The position numbers were made by a program, and so were the translations under genes. A stretch of 63,317 bases of DNA, the filler included, from Octopus bimaculoides (Eukaryota): NCBI RefSeq assembly GCF_001194135.2. It is 6 parts of 6 records of this genome, joined end to end, with 100 filler letters (N's around TTAATTAATTAA, not from the genome) between each part and the next. Parts side by side here need not be neighbours in the genome. Positions count along the whole stretch, not along the records: positions 1 to 30,740 come from NC_069005.1; 5 more parts are not named here. The stretch is one strand, 5' to 3'. Below are positions 748 through 25,049 of this stretch, piece by piece; position 1 is the stretch's first letter; every line of letters starts with the position of its first letter. Under the pieces are notes generated by a model, which ran no database searches, had not been told where the DNA came from, and was given only the letters and a program-made list of their open reading frames with translations.

Positions 748-887
748 GTTCTGACAGTCCATTCCGCTCAAACCCAACCCTCCCTGCTGGCTTCGATGAT
801 GATGATGAACTGCTGAATGCCGACATTATCACTGGAACAGCTTTCAGTAAACAATGGCTGTTTACTGTTCTTATGAAACTGATTCAG
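748..887 (+). CDS. SAAL1: SAAL1 homolog, first coding exon in the window (internal exon; phase 1 in, phase 0 out)
   Basis: ttacag|GT acceptor and CAG|gtctca donor. Translates to xSDSPFRSNPTLPAGFDDDDELLNADIITGTAFSKQWLFTVLMKLIQ, which resembles the SAAL1 N-terminus as I recall it (RNPSPP...D.IG.T.YSK.WLF.VL..LIQ). Not in the ORF track in this frame. Confidence 0.88.
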
Positions 888-1429
888 GTCTCACACTTTT
901 ACTTTCACTTTACTGATCCTAGCTTCCCTGCGATACATGTATGATCTGGGGGAAGGGGGATGGACATATGTGGTCTTTGTAGTAGTGGTGGTGTTGCTAC
1001 TGGAGACATTTGCAGCCTTCTTGGAGAGAGCTAAATATGCACCTTCTGAGGGTGGGGGCATAGGTGATTATCTGGGAAAAAGGGAAAACATATTATTCAG
1101 GGTACAGGTTGTGTGAAGCAAAAAATATGCAACCTTTTTGAGCAATATGTAGCATTTTGTATTGGATTAGTGTGGCCTTCTAGGGTGAGGAAATATGAGG
1201 ACTAGAGTGTGGGGAAGTGTGCAGCTATCAAAGCAAGGAAAATATGTGGCTCTCTGGTCGGGACGTATGACCTGCTGGGGCTGGAAATTTTTAAACTTTG
1301 GAGTGGGGTTATGATTTATTCAAAAGGAAGGGGCAGTGCCCATGACTTCCACTGTCTTTTCTCTCCCAATGGTAATATTAATGCAGTTTTCAATTTAACA
1401 TGTACACACACATATACAAAAAAAAAAAA

Positions 1430-1720
1430 AAAGGTAAAGGGTAAAGACCCCTTTCAGTCATGACTGATAATGGGATTGCCCCTAGAAATTTCCCCTCTGA
1501 GGCACAGGTCCAGGCAAGGTTGTTTATGGAAGCCCAGCAGTTGCCCATGCATACCAGCCTCCCCTCTCCATGCCATCGATGTTATCCAAGGGGCTGATAC
1601 AGCTTGGCACCTGTGATGTCGCAACTCGTTTCTGCAGCTGAGTGAACTGGAGCAACGTGAAATGAAATTTTTTTTTATTCAAGAAAACAACACACAGCTC
1701 AGTCCAGGAATCAAACAACA
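1430..1720 (-). mobile_element. CORE-type SINE with a distinct tail
   Basis: CORE-like block (+ strand cagctgagtgaactggagcaacgtgaaat) and a degenerate B-box (ccaggaatcaaac). The tail ends in ...tgactgaaaggggtctttaccttt. Confidence 0.6.
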
Positions 1721-1871
1721 AGCTTCAGGTTTGCTTCCTGTCATTAGTGCTAACAAACTTTCTGATAGCTCAGTCTACTCGTACCACAATTAGGTACCAC
1801 ATTGATACTTGCGGCAGAAAGCAACATAGTGGATAACTCATCATTGCTTTATTCAGGAGTTTGCAAGAATG

Positions 1872-2095
1872 TTAACCTTTTAGCATTTAAACCAGCCATA
1901 TCTGGCCCAAATATTCTACCAGTTTTATGTTGAAACCAGCTAGATCCCGCCTCTCATACCTACCTTACAATGTCATTCTAAAAATATAGTCACATCATTA
2001 AATTGTCAAAGCTCTGAGATAATACATGATCAGTTAAAAACAACATGATTACATGAGCATTATATTTGATGGTAATCTCACTGCCAAAGGGTTAA
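1872..2095. mobile_element. piggyBac-like MITE with TTAA target duplication
   Basis: TTAA|CCTTT...AAAGGG|TTAA ends. Homologous in inverse orientation to 10857-11084. Confidence 0.75.
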
Positions 2096-2099
2096 CCAG

Positions 2100-2740
2100 A
2101 CTGATATAGTGTTGACACACAATGTCACTAGTACTGTACTGTAGACCCAGAAGGTGCATACACAGCAACAATACTGTCCCAGGTATGTCACTGACTCTAA
2201 TGTAGATCGAGCATGTATGTGTGTGACACTGGCGATGTCCTAGATATGTCAGCAACACAGTTATGTTATCTAGGATGTTTATGTAATAACAGACCTGTCA
2301 AAGATATCTAAGCAGTAGTGTAATAATATGGGCCTAGACTGTGTATACAGCAACAGCAGCTTGTCCTAGATATGTCACCAGTACTGTAATATTGTCTAAG
2401 ATGTTTGTGTATGTAACAACAGTACTGTCCCAGATGTGTGAGCTGTACTATAATGTTGTCTAGGAGGTTTGTGCATGTAAACAAAAGCATAGTCCCAAAT
2501 ATTTTAGCTGTATAGTAATCCTGTCTAGGCCGTTTCCACATGTAAAACAACAGCAAAGTCCCAGATATGTATGTTGTATTGTAAGGTGGTCTAGTATGTT
2601 TGTGTAACTGTAGTACAGTCTTAAAAAGGGATCAGTACTGAAATAAGAGATGTGTGTGTGTGTGCCAACTACTATTTCAGATATATTAGTAGTATTATAA
2701 TGTAGTGTCTAGGATGTTAGCGTGTGTGTAACATCAACAC
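2100..2740. repeat. Degenerate ~60-66 bp minisatellite, about 8-9 units
   Basis: gtcccag/gtcctag recurs near 2177, 2238, 2298, 2363, 2427, 2492 and 2558. Consensus is about caacagtactgtcccagatatgtcaccagtactgtaatattgtctaggatgtttgtgtatgtaa. Confidence 0.7.
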
Positions 2741-2749
2741 GGGTCTATA

Positions 2750-2788
<39 letters not shown>

Positions 2789-2805
2789 CATCATGATCAT
2801 CATCA

Positions 2806-3010
2806 TCTTCATCGTTTAACGTCTGTTTTCCATGCTGGCATGGGTTGGACAGTTCAACCGGGGTCTGGGAAGCCAGGAGGCTGTACCAGGCTCCAGTCTG
2901 ATCTGGCAGTTTTTCTACAGCTACATGCCCTTCCTAACACCAACCACTCCGAGAGTGTACTGGGTGCTTTTTACGTGCCATGTTTGGATGGTGCTGTTTA
3001 CGTGCCACCG
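2806..3010 (-). mobile_element. (GAT)n-tailed retroposon copy
   Basis: catcatc...tttaacgtctgttttccatgctggcatgggttggac...atgcccttcctaacaccaacc, a family motif in reverse orientation. Confidence 0.75.
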
Positions 3011-3269
3011 GCACGGGGATCACAACAACAATTTCCATTTGATTTTGATGTACTTGACTCAATAGGTCTCCTCAATCACAGCATGTCGCCCTACGATCCA
3101 AGGTACTTTTGAGTGGGCTGGGGCTGATTATGCGACACTGGTGTAGGTTTCAGCTGTGAACTCACTTTATTTGCCCGGTCTTCTCAGTCACAGCATCTCT
3201 CCAGAGGTCTCTGTCTTTCATCATTGCCTCTGTGAGGCCCAACGTTCATACATATACATGTCACACTCA

Positions 3270-3495
3270 TATATATAATCCTTTCTGCTATAGGCACAAG
3301 GCCTGAAATTTGGGGGAGGGGGACAGTCAATTACATCGACCCCAATACTCAACAAATACACAGTCCTTAATTTATCAACCCCGAAAGAATGAAAGGCAAA
3401 GTCTACCTCAGCGAATTTGAACTCAGAACATAGCGACAGATGGAATACCACTAAGCATTTCACCCGGCGTGCTAACGATTCTGCCAGGGCGCCGC
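3270..3495 (-). mobile_element. tRNA-headed SINE (gcagaatcgttagcacgccgggtgaaatgcttag...gttcaaattc family)
   Basis: Other copies at about 4925-5105(-), 37770-37975(-), 43690-44170(-, several), 46390-46760(+), 51620-51830(-) and 59480-59650(+). B-box-like gagttcaaattcc. Confidence 0.75.
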
Positions 3496-3669
3496 CGCCT
3501 TACACTCATATATACAAGCTGCGTAAGGTATTTGAGCACAGTTATATAATTACACAAAAATGTCTCTTAGAAACAGACAATAATGCCTTTTTACTGAAAA
3601 AGGTTTTGAGGATAAAAATAAACATATTCAATAAACAATCCTCTTATCTTTGATGATAAGAATAAGCAT

Positions 3670-4125
3670 ATTCAATAAAGTCCCCTTCAGCTTCAACAAT
3701 GGGTTCTATGCAAGGTCTGAATCGCCTACATGCTAGGGTCAAGTGGTCTGTGTTCATATTTGACATTATTCTGACTATGGAGGTTTTTAGGGATTTTTTT
3801 TTGTTGGTGTTATGAGAATGCTCATTAACCTCTTTCTCAACTATGCTCTACAGCATTGTAGTCCAGTGGATTGAGATCCGGGGAGCTAGGGGGTTACGTG
3901 GTTATGAAAATTTTCTGCCATCCATTCCTGCATTGCTGTAGCCTTGTGTGATGGTGCTGGTTCTTGTTGAAACATATAAGGTGTTCCGTTGCGTACATTA
4001 TCAATCCATGGATTAACCACTGTATTCAGGACATCTATGTAGGCAGCAGAGTTTACTTGAAGACCTTGTGGAAAGAAGTGAGGAGGCATCACATGTCCTT
4101 CATTGCTGAAGGTCATCCCCAGCAT
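3670..4125 (-). pseudogene. Tc1/mariner-superfamily DD37D (maT-like) transposase remnant
   Basis: SNEGHVMPPHFFPQGLQVN..YIDVL.TVV.PWID...YMFQQ..AP.H, then PSSPDLNPLDY and ACRRFRPCIEPIVEAEG in shifted frames. Confidence 0.85.
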
Positions 4126-5141
4126 AAAAAGTAAAAAAAAGATGTGTAAAGTAATTTATTTATTTAACTTGAATTGAGAGTTGAATTTGACCTTATACAG
4201 AAATGTATACATAGGTAATAAACTTTAATATATATGGATTTAGCGTCAAAGCTCTTATTTAAATTTTTGATATATAACAAAGGAGATCGAGCCATAAGGA
4301 GTTTACTATAGACCTTTGTGGACGAATTTTTGATATTTTGGTAACGATTACATGTTTTATCTTACCAATACATTTGGTAGATATCATTATATGAACATAT
4401 ATNNNNNNNNNNNNNNNNNNNNNNNNNNNNNNNNNNNNNNNNNNNNNNNNNNNNNNNNNNNNNNNNNNNNNNNNNNNNNNNNNNNNNNNNNNNNNNNNNN
4501 NNNNNNNNNNNNNNNNNNNNNNNNNNNNNNNNNNNNNNNNNNNNNNNNNNNNNNNNNNNNNNNNNNNNNNNNNNNNNNNNNNNNNNNNNNNNNNNNNNNN
4601 NNNNNNNNNNNNNNNNNNNNNNNNNNNNNNNNNNNNNNNNNNNNNNNNNNNNNNNNNNNNNNNNNNNNNNNNNNNNNNNNNNNNNNNNNNNNNNNNNNNN
4701 NNNNNNNNNNNNNNNNNNNNNNNNNNNNNNNNNNNNNNNNNNNNNNNNNNNNNNNNNNNNNNNNNNNCCAACATCATGACTGCTGCTCAATGCCCTGTGG
4801 ACACTAAAGGCTGTAAAGCATGATGTGGACAGCAGACATTCTGACTGTGTCTGCATGCCAAGGTTAACAACTGCAGGACTGGACCTTAAGACTCAATTCA
4901 GATGGCTATGTGAAGTTTCTTATTTCTTTACTACACACAGAGGGGACAAACGGATTAAGTCGATTATATCAACCCCCAGTGCGTAACTGGTACTTATTTA
5001 ATCAACCTTGAAAGGATGAAAGGCAAAGTCGACCTCGGCGGAATTTGAACTCAGAACGTAGCGGCAGACGAAATACCGCTAACGTTTCTGCCGACTTGCT
5101 GCCTTATGTGNNNNNNNNNNNNNNNNNNNNNNNNNNNNNNN

Positions 5142-5192
5142 CGCTCTTCCGATCTACAATGGCTGTTTACTGTTCTTATGAAACTGATTCAG
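5142..5192 (+). other. Illumina adapter end (5142-5155) plus a 37-nt cDNA-derived copy of the upstream exon end (5156-5192)
   Basis: CGCTCTTCCGATCT is the common 3' end of Illumina sequencing primers/adapters and sits right after a gap. 5156-5192 is identical to 851-887. Confidence 0.9.
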
Positions 5193-5303
5193 GAGGTAGA
5201 CAAACAGAATGAACCAGGCAATGCCGATTCTGAGTTTGGTGTTGATGTCAATGAAGACCTTCAAGATGAACTCTGTAACCTTTGGGACATGTCAATGAAT
5301 TCT
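5193..5303 (+). CDS. SAAL1: SAAL1 exon 2 in window; its true acceptor is hidden by an assembly artefact
   Basis: EVDKQNEPGNADSEFGVDVNEDLQDELCNLWDMSMNS, with the SAAL1-like motif E.C..WDMSM. Donor TCT|gtaagt, phase 0/0. Confidence 0.92.
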
Positions 5304-5365
5304 GTAAGTTGTTCTTGATATAGATGCATGTATGTATTTGTGTGCATTGTGAGTGTAGATGTGTG

Positions 5366-5401
<36 letters not shown>

Positions 5402-5446
5402 TACTATAAGTAAAATCTTTCAAAGAATACTTTTTTCAATTTTTAG

Positions 5447-5530
5447 GATGTAGTTGTCTTCATGCATGAATTCAAATCTGTTGAGCTACTCTCTGCTGTG
5501 ATTGTTAAATCCAGGGCTCCAAGAGTGACG
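5447..5530 (+). CDS. SAAL1: SAAL1 exon 3 in window
   Basis: ttttag|GAT...ACG|gtaagt. 84 nt, DVVVFMHEFKSVELLSAVIVKSRAPRVT (cf. SAAL1 DVA.FL.EF...KS..PRL). Confidence 0.93.
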
Positions 5531-5712
5531 GTAAGTGGTGGTGGTCTCTTCTTTGAAATTTCTTGTTTACTGTTAGGAAATTGTCGAGTTGTCAGCAGTT
5601 TCTTCTGGGTGCAGATGGTTGTGGCATTTAAATATTTACACAGGCTTACAATTGTATCTAGTTTGGGACATTCAATGTTCTGAGTTCAAATCTTTCTAGG
5701 GGATCATTTCAA

Positions 5713-5998
5713 CATCATCATCATCGTTTAACGTCCGCTTTCCATGCTAGCTTGGGTTGGACGATTTGACTGAGGACTGGCGAACCAGATGGCTGCACCA
5801 AGCTCCAATCTGATCTGGCAGAATTTCTACAGATGGATGCCCTTCCTAATGCCAACCACTCCGCGAGTGTAGTGGGTGCTTTTACGTGCCACCGGCATGA
5901 GGGCCAGTCAGGCAGTACTGGCAACGGCCACGCTCAAAATGGTGTTTTTTATGTGCCACCTGCACAGGAGCCAGTCCAGCGGCACTGGCAACAACCTC
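5713..5998 (-). mobile_element. (GAT)n-tailed retroposon copy running into a gap
   Basis: About 90% identical by eye to the reverse complement of 15118-15463. Confidence 0.85.
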
Positions 5999-6676
5999 NN
6001 NNNNNNNNNNNNNNNNNNNNNNNNNNNNNNNNNNNNNNNNNNNNNNNNNNNNNNNNNNNNNNNNNNNNNNNNNNNNNNNNNNNNNNNNNNNNNNNNNNNN
6101 NNNNNNNNNNNNNNNNNNNNNNNNNNNNNNNNNNNNNNNNNNNNNNNNNNNNNNNNNNNNNNNNNNNNNNNNNNNNNNNNNNNNNNNNNNNNNNNNNNNN
6201 NNNNNNNNNNNNNNNNNNNNNNNNNNNNNNNNNNNNNNNNNNNNNNNNNNNNNNNNNNNNNNNNNNNNNNNNNNNNNNNNNNNNNNNNNNNNNNNNNNNN
6301 NNNNNNNNNNNNNNNNNNNNNNNNNNNNNNNNNNNNNNNNNNNNNNNNNNNNNNNNNNNNNNNNNNNNNNNNNNNNNNNNNNNNNNNNNNNNNNNNNNNN
6401 NNNNNNNNNNNNNNNNNNNNNNNNNNNNNNNNNNNNNNNNNNNNNNNNNNNNNNNNNNNNNNNNNNNNNNNNNNNNNNNNNNNNNNNNNNNNNNNNNNNN
6501 NNNNNNNNNNNNNNNNNNNNNNNNNNNNNNNNNNNNNNNNNNNNNNNNNNNNNNNNNNNNNNNNNNNNNNNNNNNNNNNNNNNNNNNNNNNNNNNNNNNN
6601 NNNNNNNNNNNNNNNNNNNNNNNNNNNNNNNNNNNNNNNNNNNNNNNNNNNNNNNNNNNNNNNNNNNNNNNNNNNN

Positions 6677-7017
6677 GTCATAGGATCGCGGTTTCGATTC
6701 CCAGACCGGGCGTTGTGAGTGTTTATTGAGCGAAAACACCTAAAGCTCCACGAGGCTCCAGCAGGGGATGGTGGCGAACCCTGCTGTACTCTTCCACCAC
6801 AACTTTCTCTCACTCTTACTTCCTGTTTCTGTTGTGCCTGTAATTCAAAGGGTCAGACTTGTCACACTGTGTCACGCTGAATATCCCCGAGAACTACGTT
6901 AATGGTACACATGTCTGTGGAGTGCTCAGCCACTTGCACATTAATTTCACGAGCAGGCTGTTCCGTTGATCGGATCAGCTGGAACCCTCGACGTCGTAAG
7001 CGACGGAATGCCAACAA
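6677..7017 (+). mobile_element. tRNA(Arg)-like-headed SINE, 5' end in gap
   Basis: B box ggtttcgattccc. The body and tail (...gacggaatgccaaca) match the full copy at 24667-25049. Confidence 0.85.
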
Positions 7018-7137
7018 TATAAAAAGGTATGTTAATAGAGAAATAGATGAAATAATTAATCTAAGCTAATTCCTAGGATGTGTTATGTAATGTATTTTTT
7101 CCCTATGAAGTAATTCCTTAATTATGTTTACTTTTAG

Positions 7138-7217
7138 GAAATCTGTGTTGGTATTCTTGGAAACCTCTCCTGTAATCCAACCGTCTGTTCAGAGATGTCA
7201 TCAAACCCAGAATTTAT
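7138..7217 (+). CDS. SAAL1: SAAL1 exon 4 in window
   Basis: cttttag|GAA...AT|gtaagg. EICVGILGNLSCNPTVCSEMSSNPEF contains the hallmark EICVGILGN. Phase 0/2. Confidence 0.94.
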
Positions 7218-7293
7218 GTAAGGTTTTAATCTTTGCTTTGTGAACTCTATGTGATGTGTGTAGCTATCTCTGTATGTTGTGTGCATGCATGTA

Positions 7294-7327
<34 letters not shown>

Positions 7328-7883
7328 TTTCATTCATCATTTTTAACCATTTTCCTGTTCTGCCAGGGCTAAATGGAACTTTATTGAGGCAGGTTTTCTA
7401 CAGCCAGATCCATTCTTCCTCTCACTAACCTCTGTTTGTTTCACAAGTAAAGTAGTTAGTCATTCCACTGGTCATCACATACTCTTACTCTTTACTCTTT
7501 TACTCGTTTCGGTCATTTGACTGCGGCCATGCTGGAGCACTGCCTTTAGTCAAGCAAATCGACCCCAGTACTTATTCTTTGGATGCCCAGTACATACATT
7601 TTTCTATGCTGGTGTGACTTGGACAGGATTTATTGAGACTGTTTTCTGTGGATGGATGTCCTTCCTTTGGCAAAGCTGTGTATTCCAAGGAGGGGATTTT
7701 TATTCCACTGGTTTTCACGTTTTGAAACTGATGACCTACAGGGCACACAGTCTATGGAAAATCTTAAACAAGAATCACCATTTTTGCTTAACTGGTGTTA
7801 ATGTGAAAGGACCAGGAAATAAGCATTTACATATGTGCATAAATGTGTGTGTGTGTATATACATGTATGTATATGTATGTGTA

Positions 7884-8107
7884 TACGAGGGTGAGGTGCT
7901 GGAAAGTTCCTGGCTTTAAGGGTATCACAAAAGACCTGGTTGGAAGTCCAGCCTTCTGAGTTCTTTTACAGGGCTTAGAAAAACTGAAGGACTGCTGCAA
8001 TATGTGTGTGAATCTGAGAGGGGAATATGTTGAATAAAATCTTAATTAACTGATCCTCCTGCATTTTCTTTTACTCAAAGCCAGGAACTTTTCAGCTCAC
8101 CCTTGTA
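7884..8107 (+). mobile_element. mariner-derived MITE
   Basis: TA|CGAGGGTGAGGTGCTGGAAAGTTCCTGGCTTT...AAAGCCAGGAACTTTTCAGCTCACCCTTG|TA. The interior retains a mariner C-terminus (QGLEKLKD.C..CVNLRGEYVE*). Confidence 0.85.
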
Positions 8108-8419
8108 TATGTGTTTTGTGTGTGTGTGCATATATATGGACACATGCTCTCTCAAGATACATACGATGGGCTTCCCTATAGTTTTTGGCTCCCAAATTTT
8201 GCTCACTAAGCATTGGTTGGTTAGAGGCTATAGTAGATGGCATTTGCCCAATGTGACACACACGTGTGTAGGCACACACACACACACACACACACGCACG
8301 CGGCTGAAACCTGAGATGATGTAGCTGTGAAAAAAACATATAGCCATGACTGGACTTGTCTGTCTGTAGGTAGATAGATAGATAGACAGACAGACAGACT
8401 AATTGATTGATTGAGTGCA

Positions 8420-8470
<51 letters not shown>

Positions 8471-8529
8471 ACTATTGTATTCTTATAAATCAGATAATTA
8501 ATTATTCATGATTTCCTCTCATATTTCAG

Positions 8530-8589
8530 AAATATGGTTTTGTTGTTATTGGAGAATCCCGATGGACTTTGCTTAGTACAGACTGTCAG
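8530..8589 (+). CDS. SAAL1: SAAL1 exon 5 in window
   Basis: tttcag|A...AG|gtaaat. 60 nt, (I)NMVLLLLENPDGLCLVQTV(R), phase 2/2, compatible with both neighbours. Confidence 0.87.
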
Positions 8590-8909
8590 GTAAATATACT
8601 GTAATATAGTGTATGCATTTAGTACGGTCTTTCAGGTGAATATACTGGACTACATTGTACTGATAAGGGAGCTGTTCATATCAGGTAATTGTACTGTTTT
8701 GTACTGTGCTGTAATTCTGTACAGACTTTTANNNNNNNNNNNNNNNNNNNNNNNNNNNNNNNNNNNNNNNNNNNNNNNNNNNNNNNNNNNNNNNNNNNNN
8801 NNNNATAGATAGATAGATAGATAGTGTGACTCCTGGCCTTGTCATCTCCTGTCAAGCTGTCCATCCTATGACAGCATGGAAAACAGATGTTAAATGATGA
8901 TGTTGATAA

Positions 8910-8960
<51 letters not shown>

Positions 8961-9693
8961 TGCAAACTCATGTTTGAATATTGTCATTGCTTGATTGAAA
9001 GTTATGCACATGCTCACATGGGCAACTTTTTCCAACAAGCAAGCTATATGAGACATGGTGCATCTTCAGGCAAGCGGCACTGCTTATAAAATGCAAGGTA
9101 ATTTTTCTTTACGTGTGCTATTTGGAAAGTCCTGTACGCTGCAGTTTGCCCTCGATTGCTGTAAATCCAACTACTACAATATTCAGGAGATGAAAAAAAA
9201 GTGACCATGGTCTCAACACTTTGCCTCCCTGACTGATGAGACTACTGTGGCCAATGTCCAATGACCAGCTTAAAATCTGCTGGAAAAATCTGGAGCTGGT
9301 CTGAATACATCCAACAAGGATCACCAATTGGTGATGTTAAGATGTATGTTACCCCTCTTATTTGACTTACATCAGTCAAGGATCAGATTGTAGTGTTAAG
9401 CAGTGAGACATATAACATCAGCCATCTTACTAAAGTCAACTAAAATCTGAGAAGATCTGATGGTTATGTTAAACAGTGTTCTGCCAGAGTAGAGTAGACC
9501 AAACTGGAGCATTGGCACAGCAAGTGGGAGTCATTTATTGTTACTAAAAGGTTTGATGTATTCTTTACTGTGATAGAAAACACCAAGTTGGCAATACTCA
9601 TGTGGCTCGGAGGTTGGAGCATTGGAGTATATCTGTTAGTGATGGAATACCAGTTAACTAAGTGGCCCTTCACTGGATGTGTTCCTGGAGACC

Positions 9694-10044
9694 TGTACTG
9701 GAACTAACCCAGTTTCTGACCGACACACAAGGCCACAAATTTATGGGGATAGTACGTACAGTTGATAGAATTAACCCAGTTTCTGACCGACACACAAGGC
9801 CACAAATTTGTGGGAATAGTACAGTTGATAAAATTAACCCAAAAAATTTGTGGGGATAGTACAGTTGATAGAATTAACCCAGTTTCTGACCGACACACAA
9901 GGCCACAAATTTGTGGGAATAGTATAGTTGATAAAATTAACCCAAAAAATTTGTGGGGATAGTACAGTTGATAAAATTAACCCAGTTTCTGACTGACACA
10001 CAAGGCCAAAAATTTGTGGGGATAGTACAGTTGATAAAATTAAC
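9694..10044. repeat. Minisatellite of 63-bp (A) and 40-bp (B) units in the order A-A-B-A-B-A
   Basis: Unit starts at 9756, 9819, 9859, 9922, 9962 and 10025. B resembles A with an internal 23-bp deletion. Confidence 0.92.
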
Positions 10045-10284
10045 TTCTGCTAACTTTCAGTAATTGACAAGTTCTTTATTTTATGGGCCCAGGAAAGAAA
10101 GGTTTCATCAACCTCAGTAGGATTTAAACCCTGAAAATAAAGCAACGTTAATAAACACCACAAGGTACTTTGTTCTATGCTCTACTGATTTTTACCAATC
10201 CAACAACAAAATTTACATGTTTGGTAAATATGTAGATTGGACCTTTAATGAGATATGAGAAAGTCGTTATTTTTCCTATCGCAG

Positions 10285-10403
10285 GTTACTATATTGCTGC
10301 CTCCAGAGTGAAGAACATTATTTGCCATGGGTTGCTGCTATCAAAGATCAAGAAGCCAATATTTTAGAACTTATCAAATTCATCATGGCCAGTTCCACAA
10401 ATG
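10285..10403 (+). CDS. SAAL1: SAAL1 exon 6 in window
   Basis: tcgcag|G...G|gtaagt. (R)LLYCCLQSEEHYLPWVAAIKDQEANILELIKFIMASSTN (cf. RLL..CL...W...FIM.SSTN). Phase 2/1. Confidence 0.92.
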
Positions 10404-10795
10404 GTAAGTTATCCTTGGCTTGAGTAGACATGTGGGTCATGGCTGGCTTTGCATGACACTGATGCTCTTACCAAAAGTCAGCATTTTATTTTCTGTCCCC
10501 ATTTAGCTGTATCCAGAAACCAGATAAAGTTCCGGCCAGTTGGCTGATTTGATGTGTCGTGGGCCTGGCGGGAAGGAGTTGTTGTGTATTATGTGATTGC
10601 ATGTCGGGTGTAGTTACCATGAAGCAGTGGTTGGATGACCTGATAGGGTTAAAGATGTACATGGTTTTGAGAGAAGTTAGGTTTTGAGGTGATAAAGAGA
10701 TCAAGGTTGAAGTTTCTGTGTGTCAGTTGGGAGAGTCAGAGATAAAACAAATATAGCCGTGAATAGCAAAGCATTTGGTTTCTACACTGGCTACA

Positions 10796-11245
10796 TATGA
10801 AGGGGTGGGGCTGAAAAGTTCCTGGCTTTGGGTAAAAGAAAATACAGAAGAATTGGTTAACCATTTGGTGTTCAGATTACTCTGTTAAATGTAATACTTT
10901 TTCACTCAAATTGTTTTGAATTAATCATGCATTATCTTATAGCTTTGAGGTTTCAATGATGTGATTGTTTATTTTTAGAATGTCAATGTAGGTTAGGTGT
11001 GAAAGGCTAGATATCGCCAGTTTGAATATAAAACATGTAGAATATCTGGGCCAGATATGGCCGGTTTAAACACTAAAGGGTTAATTATGATTTTATTCAA
11101 CATATTCCCCTCTGAGATTCACACACTTATTGCAGCAGCCCTTCAGTTTTTCTAAGCCTTGTAAAAGAACTCGGAAGAGATTGGGTCTCAAACCTGGTCT
11201 TTCATGACACCCTTAAATTCTGAAACTTTTCAGCAACCCTTCATA
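10796..11245 (-). mobile_element. mariner MITE (same family as 7884-8107) interrupted by a piggyBac-like MITE
   Basis: TA-flanked TIRs at both ends. Removing 10861-11084 restores the empty site seen in the 7.9 kb copy. Confidence 0.85.
10857..11084. mobile_element. piggyBac-like MITE (220 bp) with TTAA TSD
   Basis: TTAA at 10857-10860 and 11081-11084. Ends CCATTTGGTGTT / AACACTAAAGGG. Confidence 0.85.
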
Positions 11246-11490
11246 AATGTGGGTTCAGTTTGAGCACGAGGAAGAGTAATGAGCATTGAATTTAGGGAAA
11301 TTGAGGGAAAGTCCTTCAGAATGGAAGAAGTAAGATGTTTTCAATGTACCTCTGGCTTTGTAGAAACCGGTGCATTGAACAGTGTTGATTGTCTCTGTTT
11401 CTTTTTTTTATTACTGTTGTTTATGTTTTATTATAGTTGTTGTTGTTACAATTGTTGTAATGTCATCACTGTTCTGTCTTCTAATTTCAG

Positions 11491-11614
11491 TTGAATTATT
11501 GAAGAACGTTGGCGAATTATTAAATCTGTTGTTTTATCTCGAAGATGAACTTTGTGAAAGATGGAGTACAACAGCCATGTTGACAGCCATGTTGGAGGCT
11601 GTGAAGGAAATAGG
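11491..11614 (+). CDS. SAAL1: SAAL1 exon 7 in window
   Basis: tttcag|TT...GG|gtaatt. (V)ELLKNVGELLNLLFYLEDELCERWSTTAMLTAMLEAVKEI(G) (cf. LL..VGE...LF.LD..L...W; .LEA.KQ). Phase 1/2. Confidence 0.92.
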
Positions 11615-12128
11615 GTAATTCGTTATAGACTTAACTGTTTACCTTGAGGCAGCAATTTCTTCTTCTCACTTACACTAATGCCAGGCTGGAGACTGTCAAA
11701 GAACTAACTTCTTGGCTATTTTGAATTGACAGTACCCACCTCTCACTCACAGCTTTTTCATATTTCTCTTGAATTAAACACAGAAGATCTTTCTGATTTG
11801 GCGGGCGCCATTCTTTATTTATGTTTTATTTAGTGTGTTTCCTACCGAAACACTTTAAAACTTCGTATACTTGTATATTTTGTCTTATAGAACAGAGAAA
11901 AATTTTTATATTCGAAGTTATTTCATGCTAAAAGTTGTCGTATTTCTGTAATTTCAACCAATCACTAACGTCTATTGAGGTGAAAACAATTACTGCTGTG
12001 GAATGTAAACAACACATTCTAGCAGTGTAATGGGATCTTTTCCCTTGAATAAAATTAGTGCCGTTGTTTGTCAACAACAGCTATCGGCAGTACTGTTATT
12101 TATGACATCATTTGTGCGTTTGTATTGG

Positions 12129-12227
12129 TTTTAGGGTTAGGGTTTTAGGGTTAGGGTTTTAGGGTTCGGGTTTTAGGGTTCGGGTTTTAGGGTTCGGGTT
12201 TTAGGGTTAGGGTTAGGGTTAGGGTTA
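12129..12227 (+). repeat. Interstitial telomere-like repeat, (TTTTAGGG-TT[A/C]GGG)x6 then TTAGGG
   Basis: Direct reading gives six 14-bp units followed by two TTAGGG units and TTA. Confidence 0.9.
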
Positions 12228-12789
12228 TGAGTATTTTACTCATAATGTAAAAAGCACCCAATACACTTTGTAAAGTGGTTGGTGTTGGGAAGTCATACAG
12301 CCACAGAAACCAAACCAAAACAGACTGTGGAACCTGGTGCAGCCCCTGGCCATACCAGTTTCTGTCAAGCCGTCCAACCCATGCCAGCATGGAAAACGGA
12401 TGTTAAATATTGATGATGAAGACTATATATACACATTTGAAGGGATAATTTCAGTTTCCATCTACCATATCCACTAATATAATTTTGGTCAGTCCAGGGC
12501 GAAAGTAGAAGACACTTTGCCCAAGATGCCACAGTGTGGTTCAGAAGCAAGCTTCTTGCTAGACAGCCATGTTTGTGTCTGTATATATCTTATACTGAAA
12601 GTTCCATGACAAACACAGAATTTTACAAGGAAGTCACTAGAAGTCCTCTGCAACTTGAAGGCATGAAATAAGGAAGTCCATTTAGCTTCAAAATAGCTTC
12701 TATGTCTTCTGGAGATATGAGTTTTGTATTATCATGCACTCAAATACTTCAAGATTAAAAATATACCTTATTTTTATGTAGCCCTGATA

Positions 12790-13148
12790 CGTAAAATACA
12801 CCATTTCGAGCATGGCCGTTGATCGTTACCAACGTCGCCTCCCTGGCACAAGTGCCAGTGGCACGTGAAAAGATATTCGAGCGAAATCGTTGCCAGTGCC
12901 GATGGACTGGCTCCTGTGCAGGTGGCATGTAAAATACACCATTTCAAGCGTGGCCGTCGCCAGTACTGCCTGACTGGTCCTTGTGGTCCGGTGGCACATA
13001 AAAGCACCCACTACACTCTCTGAGTGGTTGGCGTTAGGAAGGGCATCCAGCTGTAGAAACTCTGCCAAATCAGATTGGAGCCCGGTGTCCAACCCATGCT
13101 AGCATGGAAAGCAGACGTTAAACGACGACGATGATGATGATGATGATA
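12790..13148 (+). mobile_element. (GAT)n-tailed retroposon copy
   Basis: Repeated gtggcacgt..aaa..cacc modules, ggttggcgttaggaagggcatcc, and a tail of gacgttaaacgacgacgatgatgat. Confidence 0.85.
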
Positions 13149-13249
13149 ATGCCTCCTATTCTCTCCAACTTTTCACTTTTCTCCAATTTAGCAAATATTT
13201 GAACATTGAAACATTTTTCATTATTATTCATCTTTCCTTTTTTTACCAG

Positions 13250-13332
13250 CTTTCAACCTTGTCCTGCCTTAGAAGTGTTTATCCACAATTTTCAACTCAT
13301 GTCATGTTCACAAAACGGTGTCTTGGCTTTGG
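13250..13332 (+). CDS. SAAL1: SAAL1 exon 8 in window
   Basis: taccag|C...G|gtaagt. (G)FQPCPALEVFIHNFQLMSCSQNGVLAL (cf. LDVYMH.LQL......G..A). Phase 2/1. Confidence 0.87.
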
Positions 13333-13516
13333 GTAAGTTTTTTTTCAAACTTCTTTTATACCTAATGGATTTCCTTCATTTTTATTTTGGGATCCTGTGA
13401 TTATTATTGTTGTTTGTTTACCTCGGGGAAAGTCTTGATCTAACAGACTGATAATTAAAGATGTTCCAATAGTAACCATCCTGTCTTCTTGTTCCAACAG
13501 TATATCTAAGACAACG

Positions 13517-13641
13517 TTATCTAATGTATAGTAGTATGGAGCATTTTAGTTTGTTTCTGCATGCAAATATCATGGTTGAGTTCATGTTGTAGCAATCACT
13601 TAGCAGCTTTGAAGTTGCCATGAATGTGTGTTTGTGTGTTT

Positions 13642-13680
<39 letters not shown>

Positions 13681-13990
13681 AACAATATATGAGTATATGC
13701 ATATATATGTACATGTATGTACATACCTTCATCTACATGTACATATAGATATATATCTGGGTACATGACGTTCCAAAAGAAACATGGACAAAATGATAAA
13801 CAAGGTACAACAAACAAGCAGGCCACATAGAGAACATATCCTTCATCAGCTGCCACCATTAAAACACCGGCGTTTTGAAGAGTTAGGGCAGGACGCATCG
13901 TTAAAATGGCTCTTCCCACGAATACAAATTAAATTTTTTTCATGGAGGATAGTGGCAGACGGAAAACAAGACAGGAAAACAAAATGGTGA
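13517..13990 (-). mobile_element. Dispersed repeat, possibly the terminal region of a Penelope-like element
   Basis: Homologous to 28355-28780 (ccttcatcagct...aacaccggcgtt.cgaagag...gctcttccc). The superfamily assignment is inference only. Confidence 0.5.
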
Positions 13991-14224
13991 AATGGACTTC
14001 TTCCAGTTTCTCTACCAAATCCACTCACAAGACCTTGGATGGCCTGAGAATATACAAGAAAACACTTGCCCAAGGTACCACGCAGTGAGACTGAACCCGG
14101 AACCATGTGGTTGGAAGGCGAGCTTCTTACCACTCAGCCACACATTGACACATAATGACAGTAACATCATTTTGTCCCTGATATGGGTATTATAACCCTG
14201 TCTTCATTTGTTTTAATTTTGTAG

Positions 14225-14395
14225 AAAACATGTCACAGCCTATCTTGGAGGTTTTGATGAAATACTTAATGTTTCTCTGTGATGAACCAATTGTCCCAGT
14301 GGATTTGAAAGCCAAATATCTCGCAGCTATACTCTCTCTGATCAATCTGATTTTCTTGCAAGGATCAAAGTTTGATATTGGTTCTTTCTACAAAA
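14225..14395 (+). CDS. SAAL1: SAAL1 exon 9 in window
   Basis: tttgtag|AA...A|gtaagt. (E)NMSQPILEVLMKYLMFLCDEPIVPVDLKAKYLAAILSLINLIFLQGSKFDIGSFYK, 171 nt, phase 1/1. Confidence 0.85.
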
Positions 14396-15117
14396 GTAAG
14401 TCTTCGTTTCTTGTTATTTGTTTTTTTAAAATTCTTTTTTATTATCTTTCAGTCAGAAAGCATTAGAATACCCATGATCCTTTGTTTTTTTTTATTATCT
14501 TTCAGTCAGAAAGTTGATTCATTCTTTTTTTTAAGCCTTGTACTTATTCTATTGGTATCTTTTTGCCAAACTGCTTATTTATGAGGATGTAAACAAACCA
14601 ATATCGGTTGTCAGATGGTAGTGGTGGTGGTGGGACAAAGACAGACAAACACACACATACATACACACATATACACACTCATACAATGAGCTTCTTTCAG
14701 TTTCTGTCTACCCAATCCACTTACAAAGCTTTGGTAGGCCTGAGACTATAATAGAAGACACTTGCCTAAGGACTGAACCTAGGACCATATTGTTGAGAAG
14801 CAAGTGTCTTTCCTCCCTTTTCATAATTCATGGGATTCATATACATAAGTGGTCTCTGAGACAACAAATATTTTTTAAGGTCATTATTCATATTTTCCCC
14901 TAATTTATCTCAAAATTCAGTGTTCGCAGTATTTAGCATTCAGTTTTTCTGTATTCTGATTTTTAAGTCTTGTGCAAATCAGCCTTCTCACATTTTGTTT
15001 TTTTATATTTGACCTTATGACCCAAATACCTTAGCATATCCTTCATTTATCTTAGCAGTGTCCCCAACATGAATCTGTACCCTATATTTAAGTTGTGTAT
15101 TCTTGTCTTATTTATGT

Positions 15118-15463
15118 ACCCGGCGTACCAGCGTTGCCTTACTGGCACTTGTGCCGGTGGCATGTGAAAAAACATTTGAGCGAGGTCGTTGCCAGTGCCG
15201 CTGGACTGGCTCCTGTGCAGGTGGCATGTAAAAAACACCATTTGAGCATGGCCATTGCCAGTACCACCTGACTGGCCCTCGTGCCGGTGGCACGTAAAAG
15301 CACCCACTACACTCTCAGAGTGGTTGGCATTAGGAAGGGCATCTAACTGTAGAAACTCTGCCAAATCAGATTGGAGCCTGGTGTCGCCTCCTGGTCCACC
15401 AGTCCTCATTCAAATCGTCCAACCCATGCTAGCATGGAAAGCGGATGTTAAACGATGATGATT
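15118..15463 (+). mobile_element. (GAT)n-tailed retroposon copy
   Basis: Same modules and (GAT)n tail as the other copies. Confidence 0.85.
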
Positions 15464-15542
15464 TACTTGCTTTGAAGCTGTGTACCCTACAGCTTAGCTG
15501 TGTACCCTATATTTAAACTGTCTCCTTTTGTTCTCATTTCAG

Positions 15543-15829
15543 TTGAGATGTTTCCGAAATGTTTATTCAAAATCCTGGAAGGNNNNNNNNNNNNNNNNNN
15601 NNNNNNNNNNNNNNNNNNNNNNNNNNNNNNNNNNNNNNNNNNNNNNNNNNNNNNNNNNNNNNNNNNNNNNNNNNNNNNNNNNNNNNNNNNNNNNNNNNNN
15701 NNNNNNNNNNNNNNNNNNNNNNNNNNNNNNNNNNNNNNNNNNNNNNNNNNNNNNNNNNNNNNNNNNNNNNNNNNNNNNNACAAGGCACTTCACTCCTCCT
15801 TCCTTCGTCTTAGCTGGCTTATTCCGAAA
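15543..15829 (+). CDS. SAAL1: SAAL1 exon(s) 10(-11) in window, interrupted by an N gap (15583-15779)
   Basis: tttcag|TT gives (I)EMFPKCLFKILEG before the gap. After the gap, KALHSSFLRLSWLIPK ends at AAA|gtaagt. The frame after the gap is inferred. Confidence 0.7.
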
Positions 15830-15901
15830 GTAAGTTGGTCTGTATTTGGTTTTATGTTATTGTGAAGTTGTTGCTGTAATTGTTGTTTAATCCCTGGTGC
15901 T

Positions 15902-16373
15902 GGTGCCACTTAAAAGCACCCAATCCACACCGTAAAGTGGTTGGTGTTCAGAAGGGCATCCAGCTGTAAAAACCTTGCCAAAACTGACCTCGCCTGTGCT
16001 TGTGCCACGTAAAAAGCACTAAGTCCACTCTGTTGGGTGGTTGGTATTAGGAAGGGCATCTAGCTGTAAAAACCTTGCCAAAACTAACCTCACCCATGCT
16101 TGAGCCACATAAAAAGCATTGAGTCCACTCTACTGAGTTCACTCTACTGAGTCCACTCTACTGAGTGGTTAGTTTTCAGAAGGGCATCCAGCAGTATAAA
16201 CCTTTCCAAAACTGACCTCACCTGTGCTTGAACCACATAAAAAGCATTGAGTCCACTATACTGAGTTCACTCTACTGAGTCCACTCTACTGAGTGGTTAG
16301 TTTTCAGAAGGGCATCCAGCAGTATAAACCTTTCCAAAACTGACCTCACTCATGCTTGTTCCACATAAAAAGC
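15902..16373 (+). repeat. Tandem array (100, 100, 128, 128 bp) built from the retroposon body
   Basis: The aaaagc anchor lies at 15911, 16011, 16111, 16239 and 16367. Each unit contains gtggtt.g..tt..gaagggcatc.agc.gta.aaacc.t.ccaaa. Confidence 0.88.
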
Positions 16374-16624
16374 TATATGTGGTATTTCAGTATAGTATAG
16401 GTTACTGTATACACTATGACCAAGACACTTAGCTGTCACCACAGTGTAGTACAGTTTATTGTATTGTGTCCATGACCAAGAAGACTTAATGTCAGCCGTC
16501 AAGTTTACCAAGCTGTAAGTAGGTAACAATCTGTGGTATAGTCCATTATATAGTACATGACTATAATATTAGAAAATTACTATTTCTAAATCTCACGACA
16601 TGAGATATTCAGCAACAGTACTTT

Positions 16625-16870
16625 GTAGTAAAGATTGTTTGCCAACATAACATGGCAGTCCTGGTTTAGGACTAATGTTGCTGTAATTTAGCTCCAGGAG
16701 ACATCACCTCCAGCTGGCTATACAACACGATCTGTGTCCTTGTTCGAAAATATAAGGACACAGATCATGTCATATAGCCAGCTGGTAATGATGTCTCCTG
16801 GGGCTAAATTACAGCAACATTCATCCTAAACCAGGACTGCCATGTTATGTTGGCAAACAATTTTTATTAC
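16625..16870. repeat. Long palindrome with 119-bp arms and an 8-nt loop
   Basis: 16625-16743 versus the reverse complement of 16752-16870 shows about 12 mismatches counted by eye. Confidence 0.92.
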
Positions 16871-17289
16871 AATGACTATAACACTTCTTTATTATCAACA
16901 GCTGTAAATAGCTAGCTCGGTATAATACAGTTTATTGTACTGTGTCTATGACCAAGATGACTTAATGTCAGCCGTCAAGTCTACCAAGCTGTAACTAGGT
17001 AACATTATGTGGTATAGTCCATTATATAACACTTCTTTATTATCAACAGTCCAGTCTGTCTTGGTGTAGATAGATAGCTCAGTGTAGTACAGTTTATTGT
17101 ATTGTGTCCATGACCAAGACACTAAATTGTTAACAGTCCAGTCTACTGAGATGTAAGTAGACATCACAGTTCATTGTAATTCACTGCTGTAGCCAGTGAC
17201 AGTAATGTGAAGATGACACAGTGACAGTTGTCAGTTATTCCAAAGGCGAGGTCTGTCTGTTATGGACTGTCACCCTCTCCATGAAAATG

Positions 17290-17530
17290 TGGGTGGCACA
17301 TAAAATACACCATTGCCAGTACCGCCTGACTGGCCTTCGTGCTGGTGGCATGTAAAAGCACCCACTACACTCTCTGAGTGGTTGGCGTTAGGAAGGGCAT
17401 CCAGCTGTAGAAACTCTGCCAAATCAGACTGGAGCCTGGTGTTGCCATCCGGTTTCACCAGTCCTCAGTCGAATCGTCCAACCCATGCTAGCATGGAAAG
17501 CGGATATTAAACGATGATGATGATGATGAT
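17290..17530 (+). mobile_element. (GAT)n-tailed retroposon copy (another at about 18098-18260)
   Basis: Family motif and (GAT)n tail. Confidence 0.82.
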
Positions 17531-17662
17531 TGATCTAAGACTACAGAAAGAAGACTTGAACGTAAGGTCTGACTTTTGTAGACTTGGTGATTCAGGTCAT
17601 ATTAACAAAATCAAAAATGCAATCTAACAAATACAAACACAGTGTGACTGTATTATAATCTT

Positions 17663-17716
<54 letters not shown>

Positions 17717-17728
17717 TCTTTTGATCAG

Positions 17729-17938
17729 AAAACTACAGAAGACTCCGTTTGGTGTCAGCTACTCCATTACCTTGACACAGAATGCTCCGAGTTACACCTG
17801 CATTACCTGTTGCTTATTTTACAAGATGAGAGCGAGGACATAAGGAATCCGTTGCATCACCTCAAGGCTGTCAGTGATAGCAACGGACTGTACAGGCTCC
17901 ATCACGTTGTCATGGATACAGTTGTCGGTGGTGACTGA
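17729..17938 (+). CDS. SAAL1: Probable terminal coding exon of SAAL1
   Basis: A 49-nt poly-T tract precedes gatcag|AAA. A phase-0 open frame of 69 codons, KTTEDSVWCQLLHYLDTECSELHLHYLLLILQDESEDIRNPLHHLKAVSDSNGLYRLHHVVMDTVVGGD*, joins in frame to ...WLIPK. Homology in this part is weak. Confidence 0.65.
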   Translation, partial: KTTEDSVWCQLLHYLDTECSELHLHYLLLILQDESEDIRNPLHHLKAVSDSNGLYRLHHVVMDTVVGGD

Positions 17939-18413
17939 ACGTGGATTCCTGCTGCTTTTTATTTACGAGAGAGGTCAGGTGGAAGGGGAGAGGTTGTTAC
18001 TTTCTGTCTGACCGGGTAAATTAATAGAGACGTGTATGCTAGTAACTGTGTGTGTGTGTGTGTGTGTATATTGCATATGAATTTATATGTATATATACTA
18101 CACTCTCTGAGTGGTTGGCGTTAGGAAGGGCATCCAGCTGTAGAAACTCTGCCAAATCAGATTGGAGCTTGGTGTAGCCATCTGGTTTCACCAGTCCTCA
18201 GTCAAATCGTCCAACCCATGCTAGCATGGAAAGCGGACGTTAAACGACGACGACGACAACAATATACATGCAAGTATGTGTCAAAACATGGTTGATCTTT
18301 GCATATGTGTGTGTGCTCGTACGTGCGTGCCTGTGAGCAAGAGAATATGTGTAGATGTATGTATACTCATAGATGAATGTGTATATATATATATGTGTGT
18401 GTGTCTATGTGTG

Positions 18414-23140: not shown

Positions 23141-23675
23141 GCAATGATCCAGCTTAAAAAGGTCGGCCCCAACCCGAATGCCACAAGGACCAACACAAGA
23201 TACTGACGGTCAACCCTATCGAAAGCCTTAGATTGATCTAGATGGACCAGAGCCCCACTCTTGCCAGGAATTCTGTTAACCCTCTTTAAGATATAGCATA
23301 TAAGGTGGAGATTGTCGTGTATGGATCTGCCCAGAGTGGCACACATTTGTGCCTCCCCAACAATTCCACCCATGACACACGCCAACCTTTCTGCTAACAC
23401 CTTGGCCAAAATCTTCAGTTCTGTGTTAAGCAGAGTGATGGGCCGAAAATTGTCTACAAAGTCCCCCTTGATTGGGTCCTTTCTAAGCAGTGTCACCACT
23501 CTCTGGCTCACAGATCTGGGGATGGACCCATTCTGTTGCCAGTTCATGAAAACGCATGCCAGTAGGTACCTGAACAAGTCTGGTATACTATAACCCCTAG
23601 GGAAGACCATATAGCCCCAGCAACTTGTCCGTGCTGCAGTCTGCAAGAGCCTCCTCCACCTCCGCAGCTGTGATT
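23141..23675 (-). pseudogene. L1/Tx1-clade LINE reverse transcriptase fragment
   Basis: ITAAEVEEALADCSTDK..GL.GLP, then VVTLLRKD...DNFRPITLLNTELKILAKVLAERL...GRSIHDNLHL...LDQSKAFDRVDRQYL...AFGLGPTF. Confidence 0.9.
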
Positions 23676-24666: not shown

Positions 24667-25049
24667 TGTTGGCACTCCGTCGCTTATGACGTCGAGGATC
24701 CCAGTCTATCCGATCAACGGAACAGCCTGCTCGTGAAATTAACGTGCAAGTGGCTGAGCACTCCACAGACACGTGTACCCTTAACATAATTCTCGAGGAT
24801 ATTCAGCGTGACACAGTGTGACAAGGCTGACCCTTTGAATTACAGGCACAACAGAAACAGGAAGAAAGAGTGAGAGAAAGTTGTGGTGAAAGAGTACAGC
24901 AGGGTTCACCACCATCCCTTGCCGGAGCCTCGTGGAGCTTTAGGTGTTTTCGCTCAATAAACACTCACAACGCCCGGTCTGGGAATCGAAACCACGATCC
25001 TATGACTGCGAGTCCGCTGCCCTAACCACTGGGCCATTGTGCCTCCACT
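24667..25049 (-). mobile_element. Full-length tRNA(Arg)-like SINE with a 12-bp TSD (re-assembled a second time at 25901-26249)
   Basis: A box tggcccagtgg, B box ggtttcgattccc and a TCG-like anticodon loop. TSD tgtgactagtgt at 24655-24666 and 26250-26261. Confidence 0.88.

What the first reader, a model, noticed from the sequence alone, without database searches (positions are those of the whole stretch)
5142..5303. Illumina adapter plus a spliced exon-exon junction assembled into genomic DNA
Seen: right after a gap comes CGCTCTTCCGATCT, then 37 nt identical to the end of the upstream exon (851-887), joined directly to the next exon at exactly the splice junction (CAG|GAG). Established: CGCTCTTCCGATCT is the shared 3' end of Illumina primers/adapters. 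Inference: an untrimmed RNA-seq or cDNA read was incorporated during assembly or gap filling and overwrote the real acceptor. It mimics exon duplication, intron loss or retroposition, and would corrupt gene models (e.g. an RSSDLQWLF... peptide).
Basis: partly seen in the sequence, partly recalled or inferred. Interest (0 to 1): 0.75.

Follow-up and report, generated by a model that had tools for sequence, protein, structure and literature searches.

The report
Sequencing adapter and spliced read in assembly
A 51-base stretch next to a gap in the public Octopus bimaculoides genome is not octopus DNA order at all but the tail of an Illumina adapter fused to a spliced (intron-free) copy of the SAAL1-like gene's exon junction: an assembly artefact, not biology.

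Summary
After a 31-N gap (5111-5141) comes CGCTCTTCCGATCT (5142-5155). This is the only copy in the window, and about 0.0002 exact copies are expected by chance. Next come 37 nt (5156-5192) identical to 851-887, the last 37 nt of the preceding exon, which is itself followed by a GT donor. These are joined directly to the next exon (5193-5303).

The window is Octopus bimaculoides GCA_001194135.2, chromosome CM046625.1. The adapter lies at record positions 24,921,804-24,921,817. The gene is a SAAL1-like gene.

[quoted passage not shown] Both show an ordinary acceptor (...TTCTTTTCATTTCCGACGTCAG|GAGGTAGAC) in front of this exon. Homology to them starts only at window 5189. The last ~380 nt of their intron has no counterpart anywhere in the 35 kb of the O. 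bimaculoides locus held here.

So an untrimmed, adapter-bearing read from a spliced template, most likely cDNA, was built onto a contig end, and the true intron end is missing.

One prediction fails. Both NCBI protein models read KLIQ|EVDKQ correctly, because the duplicated exon tail happens to end in AG at the right place. This is a curation issue of low biological interest.

The parts
748..887 (+). Genuine exon of the SAAL1-like gene. It is the second coding exon of the RefSeq model. Its last 37 nt (851-887) are the source of the duplicate. The GT donor is at 888-889.
   Evidence: tblastn with P0001. The spliced model equals XP_052832579.1 residues 11-346. Acceptor AG at 746-747.
888..5110 (+). 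Intron, incompletely assembled. It contains a 365-N gap at 4403-4767. Its last piece is a 343-nt contig (4768-5110) that ends in a SINE-like repeat.
   Evidence: Collinear with O. vulgaris and O. sinensis only for 734-1292 and 1997-2768. 4945-5100 matches many dispersed copies.
5111..5141 (.). Scaffold gap of 31 N. The true 3' end of the intron (polypyrimidine tract and acceptor) should lie here.
   Evidence: The last ~380 nt of the O. vulgaris intron has no match anywhere in the 35-kb O. bimaculoides locus.
5142..5155 (+). Last 14 nt of an Illumina adapter (CGCTCTTCCGATCT). Not octopus sequence.
   Evidence: Exact match to the 3' end of the TruSeq universal / PE adapters. Unique in the window with 0.02 expected. 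Absent from the O. vulgaris and O. sinensis loci.
5156..5192 (+). Artefactual second copy of exon positions 851-887. It is the 5' part of a spliced (intron-free) sequenced fragment.
   Evidence: 37/37 identity. Single-copy in O. vulgaris and O. sinensis. Here it aligns to their exon end, not to their intron end.
5193..5303 (+). Genuine next exon (EVDKQNEPGNADSEFGVDVNEDLQDELCNLWDMSMNS). From here on the contig is ordinary genomic DNA, with the donor GTAAGT at 5304.
   Evidence: Collinear with O. vulgaris and O. sinensis from 5189 onwards, including the following intron.
5447..17941 (+). Rest of the SAAL1-like gene. Exons are at 5447-5530, 7138-7217, 8530-8589, 10285-10403, 11491-11614, 13250-13332, 14225-14395, 15543-15582 (cut by the gap at 15583-15779), 15782-15829, and 17729 to the stop near 17941.
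   Evidence: tblastn and splice-site reading. All internal exons have AG/GT borders.

Best explanation
This is an assembly artefact.

Mechanism. A short library fragment derived from spliced SAAL1-like mRNA (cDNA) began at the base corresponding to 851 and ran across the exon-exon junction into the next exon. Because the fragment was shorter than the read, the read ran through into the adapter. On the minus strand it reads ...CCTCCTGAATCAG...CCATTGT + AGATCGGAAGAGCG.... The read was not trimmed. It shared its exon-2 part with the genuine genomic contig that starts in or near that exon. It was therefore used to extend the contig's left end during contig building or gap closing.

Result. The extension ends in adapter, nothing can join it to the intron, and a gap remains. 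The real 3' end of the intron, with its polypyrimidine tract and acceptor, is missing from the assembly. The Hi-C based version 2 assembly inherited the contig unchanged.

What is shown: the adapter, the duplicate, the exact splice junction, the absence of all three in sister species, and the missing intron end.

What is inferred: the read-through geometry, the cDNA (rather than genomic) origin of the template, and the assembly step at which it entered.
For: The adapter 14-mer lies flush against the gap, is unique, and is not expected by chance.

The 37/37 duplicate of the exon end starts exactly where the adapter ends. It stops exactly at the donor site and is joined to the first base of the next exon.

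The join is the real mRNA join. The spliced model from the window is identical to RefSeq XP_052832579.1 over 336 aa. KLIQEVDK is conserved in O. vulgaris, O. sinensis, a cephalopod-like transcript (P0001, 80% identical) and Haliotis.

The window is O. bimaculoides GCA_001194135.2, with 0 mismatches in 21,580 compared bases. That assembly is Hi-C data laid on the earlier shotgun assembly (PMC9068888) and has 713,915 contigs (PMC10700109).

O. vulgaris and O. sinensis show one copy of the 37-mer, no adapter, and a normal acceptor ...TTCTTTTCATTTCCGACGTCAG|GAGGTAGAC. Homology with the window starts at 5189.

The ~380 nt upstream of that acceptor is unique sequence conserved between the two sister species. 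It is absent from the O. bimaculoides locus.

The path stops in adapter after only 37 nt. This argues for very few supporting reads, that is, a contaminant rather than a full-coverage genomic allele (inference).
Against: No reads were available, so the library of origin is unknown. I could not read the methods of the original assembly paper because it is not held. I therefore cannot say whether RNA-derived data were ever offered to the assembler or only contaminated a DNA lane.

Assemblers normally discard very low-coverage paths, so how a rare read survived is unexplained.

The comparison species diverged about 34 Myr ago (PMC10700109). They show what the locus should look like, not the O. 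bimaculoides sequence itself.
Confidence: 0.9

Rival explanations
1. The adapter is still an artefact, but the spliced template was genomic. A DNA-library read from a young processed retrocopy of the SAAL1-like gene elsewhere in the genome, or from an allele that has precisely lost this intron, was mis-joined to the parent locus through the shared exon sequence.
For: The exon-exon junction alone cannot tell cDNA from a retrocopy, and cDNA-detector treats this as the main confounder (PMC8709999). Reverse-transcriptase-bearing elements exist in this very window (RVT_1 at 23074-23817 minus strand).
Against: A genomic copy would have full read depth, so the contig should have continued further into exon-1 sequence instead of stopping in adapter after 37 nt (inference). 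The 37 + 111 nt are identical to the parent exons, which would require a very young copy. Read-through into adapter needs an insert shorter than the read. That is usual in RNA-seq libraries and unusual in size-selected genomic libraries (general knowledge). O. vulgaris and O. sinensis keep the intron.
Confidence: 0.05
2. An in-vitro chimera. Two genomic fragments from the same locus, the exon-1 end and the exon-2 start, were fused by PCR template switching or ligation at the shared microhomology TCAGG, and the product was then sequenced with adapter read-through.
For: The exon end (...ATTCAG|G) and the orthologous intron end (...CGTCAG|G) share TCAGG. A microhomology therefore exists at the join.
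Against: A random chimera would have to break both partners exactly at the donor and the acceptor of the same intron. Five-base microhomologies are common, so the coincidence with the splice junction is about one in thousands (inference). Splicing explains it without any coincidence.
Confidence: 0.03
3. The sequence is real genomic DNA. A partial duplication of the exon-1 tail sits in front of exon 2, and the adapter-like 14-mer is a chance match.
For: Only one point: the duplicated tail supplies a usable AG, so the gene would still be spliceable.
Against: It is a 14/14 match to an adapter at 2.3e-4 expected per window, it lies exactly at a gap edge, and it is exactly abutting the duplicate. 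It is absent in both sister species.
Confidence: 0.01

Closest known systems
Adapter/vector remnants in deposited genome assemblies (what NCBI's VecScreen and FCS-adaptor screens target)
   Same: Both involve the 3' end of an Illumina adapter at a contig end next to a gap, inherited by later versions of the assembly.
   Different: Only 14 nt remain here. That is probably below usual screening thresholds (my knowledge, not tested). The adapter is also attached to a spliced insert, not to ordinary genomic sequence.
cDNA contamination of DNA sequencing libraries (cDNA-detector, PMC8709999; the APP 'gencDNA' versus vector contamination debate, bioRxiv 10.1101/706788)
   Same: The signature is identical. 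The sequence matches the genome up to an exon boundary and then continues into the neighbouring exon instead of the intron.
   Different: Those cases are seen as soft-clipped reads in alignments, usually from cloned cDNA in vectors. Here a single such read appears to have been fixed into a reference assembly, and the flanking foreign sequence is a library adapter, not a plasmid.
Processed retrocopy / retrogene, or precise intron loss
   Same: Both show exons joined exactly at the splice junction in DNA.
   Different: This case has only one junction and only 37 nt of the upstream exon. It sits at the parent locus and is bounded by adapter and a gap. No poly(A), target-site duplication or second locus is visible. 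The downstream intron is retained.

Membership tests
Illumina adapter contamination of an assembly | Exact match to a known adapter sequence, more than chance would give | tested here: met
   14/14 match to the 3' end of the TruSeq universal / PE adapters. There is 1 hit against 0.02 expected with up to 2 mismatches, and 2.3e-4 expected for the exact match.
Illumina adapter contamination of an assembly | Located at a contig end or gap edge, in the orientation adapter then insert | tested here: met
   It starts at the first base after the 31-N run and is followed directly by the insert.
Illumina adapter contamination of an assembly | Absent from independent sequence of the same locus | tested here: inconclusive
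   It is absent from the orthologous loci of O. vulgaris and O. sinensis. No independent O. bimaculoides assembly or reads were available.
cDNA / spliced-read contamination | The join coincides exactly with an annotated donor and acceptor, with the reading frame preserved | tested here: met
   887|GT donor. The 5193 exon start equals the orthologous acceptor position. The protein is continuous and identical to RefSeq.
cDNA / spliced-read contamination | The genuine intron-exon boundary exists in the organism and is displaced by the contaminant | tested here: inconclusive
   Sister species have the boundary. In O. bimaculoides it is simply missing from the assembly. Genomic reads are needed.
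cDNA / spliced-read contamination | The source read belongs to an RNA-derived library | not testable with these tools
   No read archives can be searched here.
Processed retrocopy | Several or all introns removed, a poly(A) tail, target-site duplications, and a location away from the parent gene | tested here: not met
   There is one junction only, the next intron is retained (5304-5446), and it sits at the parent locus bounded by adapter. A retrocopy elsewhere in the genome could not be searched for.
SAAL1 protein family (identity of the host gene) | Significant full-length similarity to proteins named SAAL1 / saal1-like | tested here: met
   E 3e-243 to O. vulgaris saal1-like and E 1e-84 to 1e-91 to Haliotis saal1-like. 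Fish saal1 hits are also found, and all carry precomputed PF28174 SAAL1_C. My N-terminal 337-aa model alone gives no Pfam hit, as expected for a C-terminal domain.

The most novel reading that the evidence does not exclude
The sequenced O. bimaculoides individual really carries spliced SAAL1-like DNA. This would be either a very young processed retrocopy or an allele with precise loss of this ~4-6 kb intron. A genomic read from it, with an untrimmed adapter, was assembled onto the parent locus.
Probability: 0.04. Interest if true: 0.35.

Novelty: not a real feature. Interest (0 to 1): 0.1.

Why it matters
This matters for curation, not for biology.

- The public O. bimaculoides chromosome CM046625.1 carries 51 nt at 24,921,804-24,921,854 that are not the true local sequence, and it lacks the real end of an intron.
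- Anyone scanning this genome for exon duplication, intron loss, retroposition or unusual splice sites could be misled.
- If one cDNA-derived, untrimmed read got in, others may have too. A genome-wide scan for adapter k-mers at gap edges and for transcript junction k-mers would be worthwhile.
- In this instance the gene models escaped damage by luck, because the duplicated tail ends in AG at the right place.

Tried and rejected
- The first word-indexed protein search with the 112-aa three-exon peptide found nothing. Pfam and PDB searches of the same peptide also gave nothing useful. The exhaustive phmmer search and a second search with the longer model then identified the gene and the species.
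- ARAGORN and Rfam found nothing in the window, so the repeat before the gap could not be named.
- The original O. bimaculoides genome paper is not in the held library. I could not check which assembler was used, how reads were trimmed, or whether RNA data were used. My recollection that it was Meraculous is unverified. The Meraculous paper only shows that gaps are closed by reads or k-mer walks, not how a partial extension would be kept.
- I considered that the 31 N might be adapter masked at submission rather than a scaffold gap. I rejected this as less likely. A mask would have covered the last 14 nt too, and the other N runs in the window have the variable sizes of estimated scaffold gaps.
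- I checked every other gap edge in the window for adapter pieces and for duplicated exon ends. None were found.
- An 11-12-nt match to PE adapter 2 at 375-376 on the minus strand is not at a contig end and is chance-level.

Full report
**What is in the sequence**

Positions 5111-5141 are 31 N. The first 14 bases after them, 5142-5155, are CGCTCTTCCGATCT. The next 37 bases, 5156-5192, are identical to 851-887.

The identity begins exactly where the adapter-like string ends: 850 is A and 5155 is T. It ends at the exon border. 887 is followed by GTCTCA, a splice donor. 5192 is followed by GAGGTAGAC..., an open reading frame that runs to a GTAAGT donor at 5304.

The 14-mer is unique in the window on both strands. 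A search allowing two mismatches still finds only this site, against 0.02 expected. The expectation for an exact hit is 2.3e-4. The 37-mer has exactly two copies, with none expected.

The 14th base from the insert (C) fits the TruSeq universal / PE adapter 1 and the old PE adapter 2. It does not fit the TruSeq index-side adapter.

The orientation is adapter end followed by insert. That is what one sees after reverse-complementing a read that ran through a short insert into the adapter (insert + AGATCGGAAGAGCG...). This step rests on established knowledge of Illumina library structure.

**What gene and what genome**

The three exons around the site translate to one continuous peptide.

- A word-indexed search with that peptide found nothing.
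- An exhaustive phmmer search found 183 relatives. The best was 80% identical and reads FSKQWLFTVLMKLIQEVDKQNE across the junction.
- Named relatives are 'protein saal1-like'.
- Using the best hit, I located twelve exon segments on the + strand between 748 and about 17941. All internal borders are AG/GT.
- A second search with this model hit 'protein saal1-like' of Octopus vulgaris at E 3e-243.
- That cluster contains two O. bimaculoides RefSeq proteins.
- My model is identical to XP_052832579.1 over all 336 comparable residues.

Fetching the encoding contig showed that the window is O. bimaculoides GCA_001194135.2, chromosome CM046625.1. There were no mismatches in 21,580 compared bases. The adapter lies at record positions 24,921,804-24,921,817.

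That assembly is Hi-C scaffolding of the earlier shotgun assembly (PMC9068888). It has 713,915 contigs (PMC10700109). This is the fragmented short-read background in which such artefacts arise.

**Comparison with independent assemblies of close relatives**

I fetched the orthologous loci of O. vulgaris (GCA_951406725.2) and O. sinensis (GCA_006345805.1). The stretches fetched contain no Ns.

- Both have the 37-mer once, at the exon end and followed by the same gtctca donor. Neither has the adapter.
- In both, the next exon is preceded by an ordinary acceptor...TAATATGTTTTTACTTATTTTTGATTCTTTTCATTTCCGACGTCAG|GAGGTAGAC.
- Homology between the window and these species starts at 5189. That is only four bases (TCAG) before the exon. 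Those four bases happen to be shared between the exon-1 tail and the true intron end.
- Window 5156-5193 aligns to their exon-1 end, about 6 kb upstream in those species.
- The last ~380 nt of the O. vulgaris intron is unique sequence conserved in O. sinensis. It has no match anywhere in the 35-kb O. bimaculoides locus.
- From 5193 onwards the window is collinear genomic DNA, including the next intron.

So the true 3' end of the intron is missing. In its place stand adapter and spliced exon sequence.

**Most likely mechanism**

- A short fragment of spliced SAAL1-like cDNA began at the base corresponding to 851.
- It was sequenced through into the adapter and was not trimmed.
- It was attached to the genomic contig through the shared exon-2 sequence.
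- The extension ends in adapter, so nothing could bridge to the intron, and a gap remained.

Shown: the adapter, the duplicate, the exact junction, their absence in relatives, and the missing intron end.

Inferred: the read-through geometry, the cDNA origin, and the step at which the read entered.

Two arguments favour cDNA over a genomic spliced copy.

- The path stops in adapter after 37 nt. This implies very few supporting reads, whereas a retrocopy or an intron-less allele would have full coverage and would extend further.
- Read-through needs an insert shorter than the read, which is common in RNA-seq libraries and rare in size-selected genomic ones.

I could not check the original assembly methods. 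How RNA-derived reads met the assembler is therefore unknown. It could have been deliberate use, lane sharing or carry-over.

**Rivals**

- A genomic retrocopy or an allele with precise intron loss as the template: about 5%.
- An in-vitro chimera at the TCAGG microhomology: about 3%.
- Real sequence with a chance adapter match: about 1% or less.

Each rival is addressed above and in the report sections. The first is the only one with any biological interest.

The predicted corruption of gene models did not occur in the models I could see. XP_052832579.1 and the older XP_014783106.1 both read KLIQ|EVDKQ.

The duplicated exon tail ends in ...TTCAG, so there is an AG at 5191-5192 exactly where the true acceptor would be. 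A GT-AG intron from 888 to 5192 therefore gives the correct protein. The RSSDLQWLF... reading exists only as a frame cut off by the gap.

The RefSeq protein is 'partial' for a different reason: the gap at 15583-15779 cuts a coding exon.

**Comparison with what is known**

Adapter remnants in assemblies are routine targets of contamination screens. Spliced reads in DNA data are the recognised signature of cDNA contamination (PMC8709999; bioRxiv 10.1101/706788).

This case combines the two and has become fixed in a reference sequence. It is not a new kind of biological feature.

**Verdict**

Artefact. Confidence is about 0.9. Interest is low, apart from curation of this widely used genome.

Noticed in passing
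window 24700-25052 and 25901-26253 (gap 25053-25900): The 353 nt before the 848-N gap are 100% identical to the 353 nt after it. The two contig ends therefore overlap perfectly. This is either an unmerged overlap (a false gap) or a collapsed ~1.2-kb tandem repeat. The sequence is a dispersed repeat that also occurs inverted at 6677-7017 (94%).
   Followed up: partly
window 15583-15779: A 197-N gap interrupts a coding exon of the SAAL1-like gene. In O. vulgaris and O. sinensis this part encodes a His/Gln-rich stretch (…KKKHHHHHHHHHQQPQQ…). This is why RefSeq XP_052832579.1 is 'partial' (346 aa, against 481-500 aa in the congeners).
   Followed up: partly
L001 (O. vulgaris) about 21269-21380; protein CAI9740702.1: The O. 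vulgaris protein model lacks 19 residues (VNEDLQDELCNLWDMSMNS) of this exon, although the DNA encodes them. The model appears to use an internal GT (GAT|GTCAAT) as the donor. This is either an alternative isoform or an annotation slip.
   Followed up: no
window 23074-23817, minus strand: An ORF with a reverse-transcriptase domain (Pfam RVT_1, E 7e-11). It is a retroelement fragment downstream of the gene.
   Followed up: partly
window 12113-12228: An interstitial telomere-like array (GGTTTTAGGGTTAGGGTT units, 14-nt period) inside an intron of the SAAL1-like gene.
   Followed up: no
window 4768-5110: A small 343-nt contig sits between two gaps. Its unique part (4768-4944) has no counterpart in the O. 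vulgaris or O. sinensis loci, and the rest is a very abundant SINE-like repeat. Its placement in this intron is unverified.
   Followed up: partly
window 9689-10064, 15918-16401, 26695-27042: Intronic and intergenic tandem arrays with periods of about 103 nt and 128 nt, plus a GA-rich unit of about 50-100 nt.
   Followed up: no
L001 18447-19204 and 20010-20881 versus window 1997-2980: One stretch of the O. bimaculoides intron matches the O. vulgaris intron twice, once on each strand. O. vulgaris therefore has an inverted duplication here that the O. bimaculoides assembly shows only once. This is either a real difference or a collapse.
   Followed up: no
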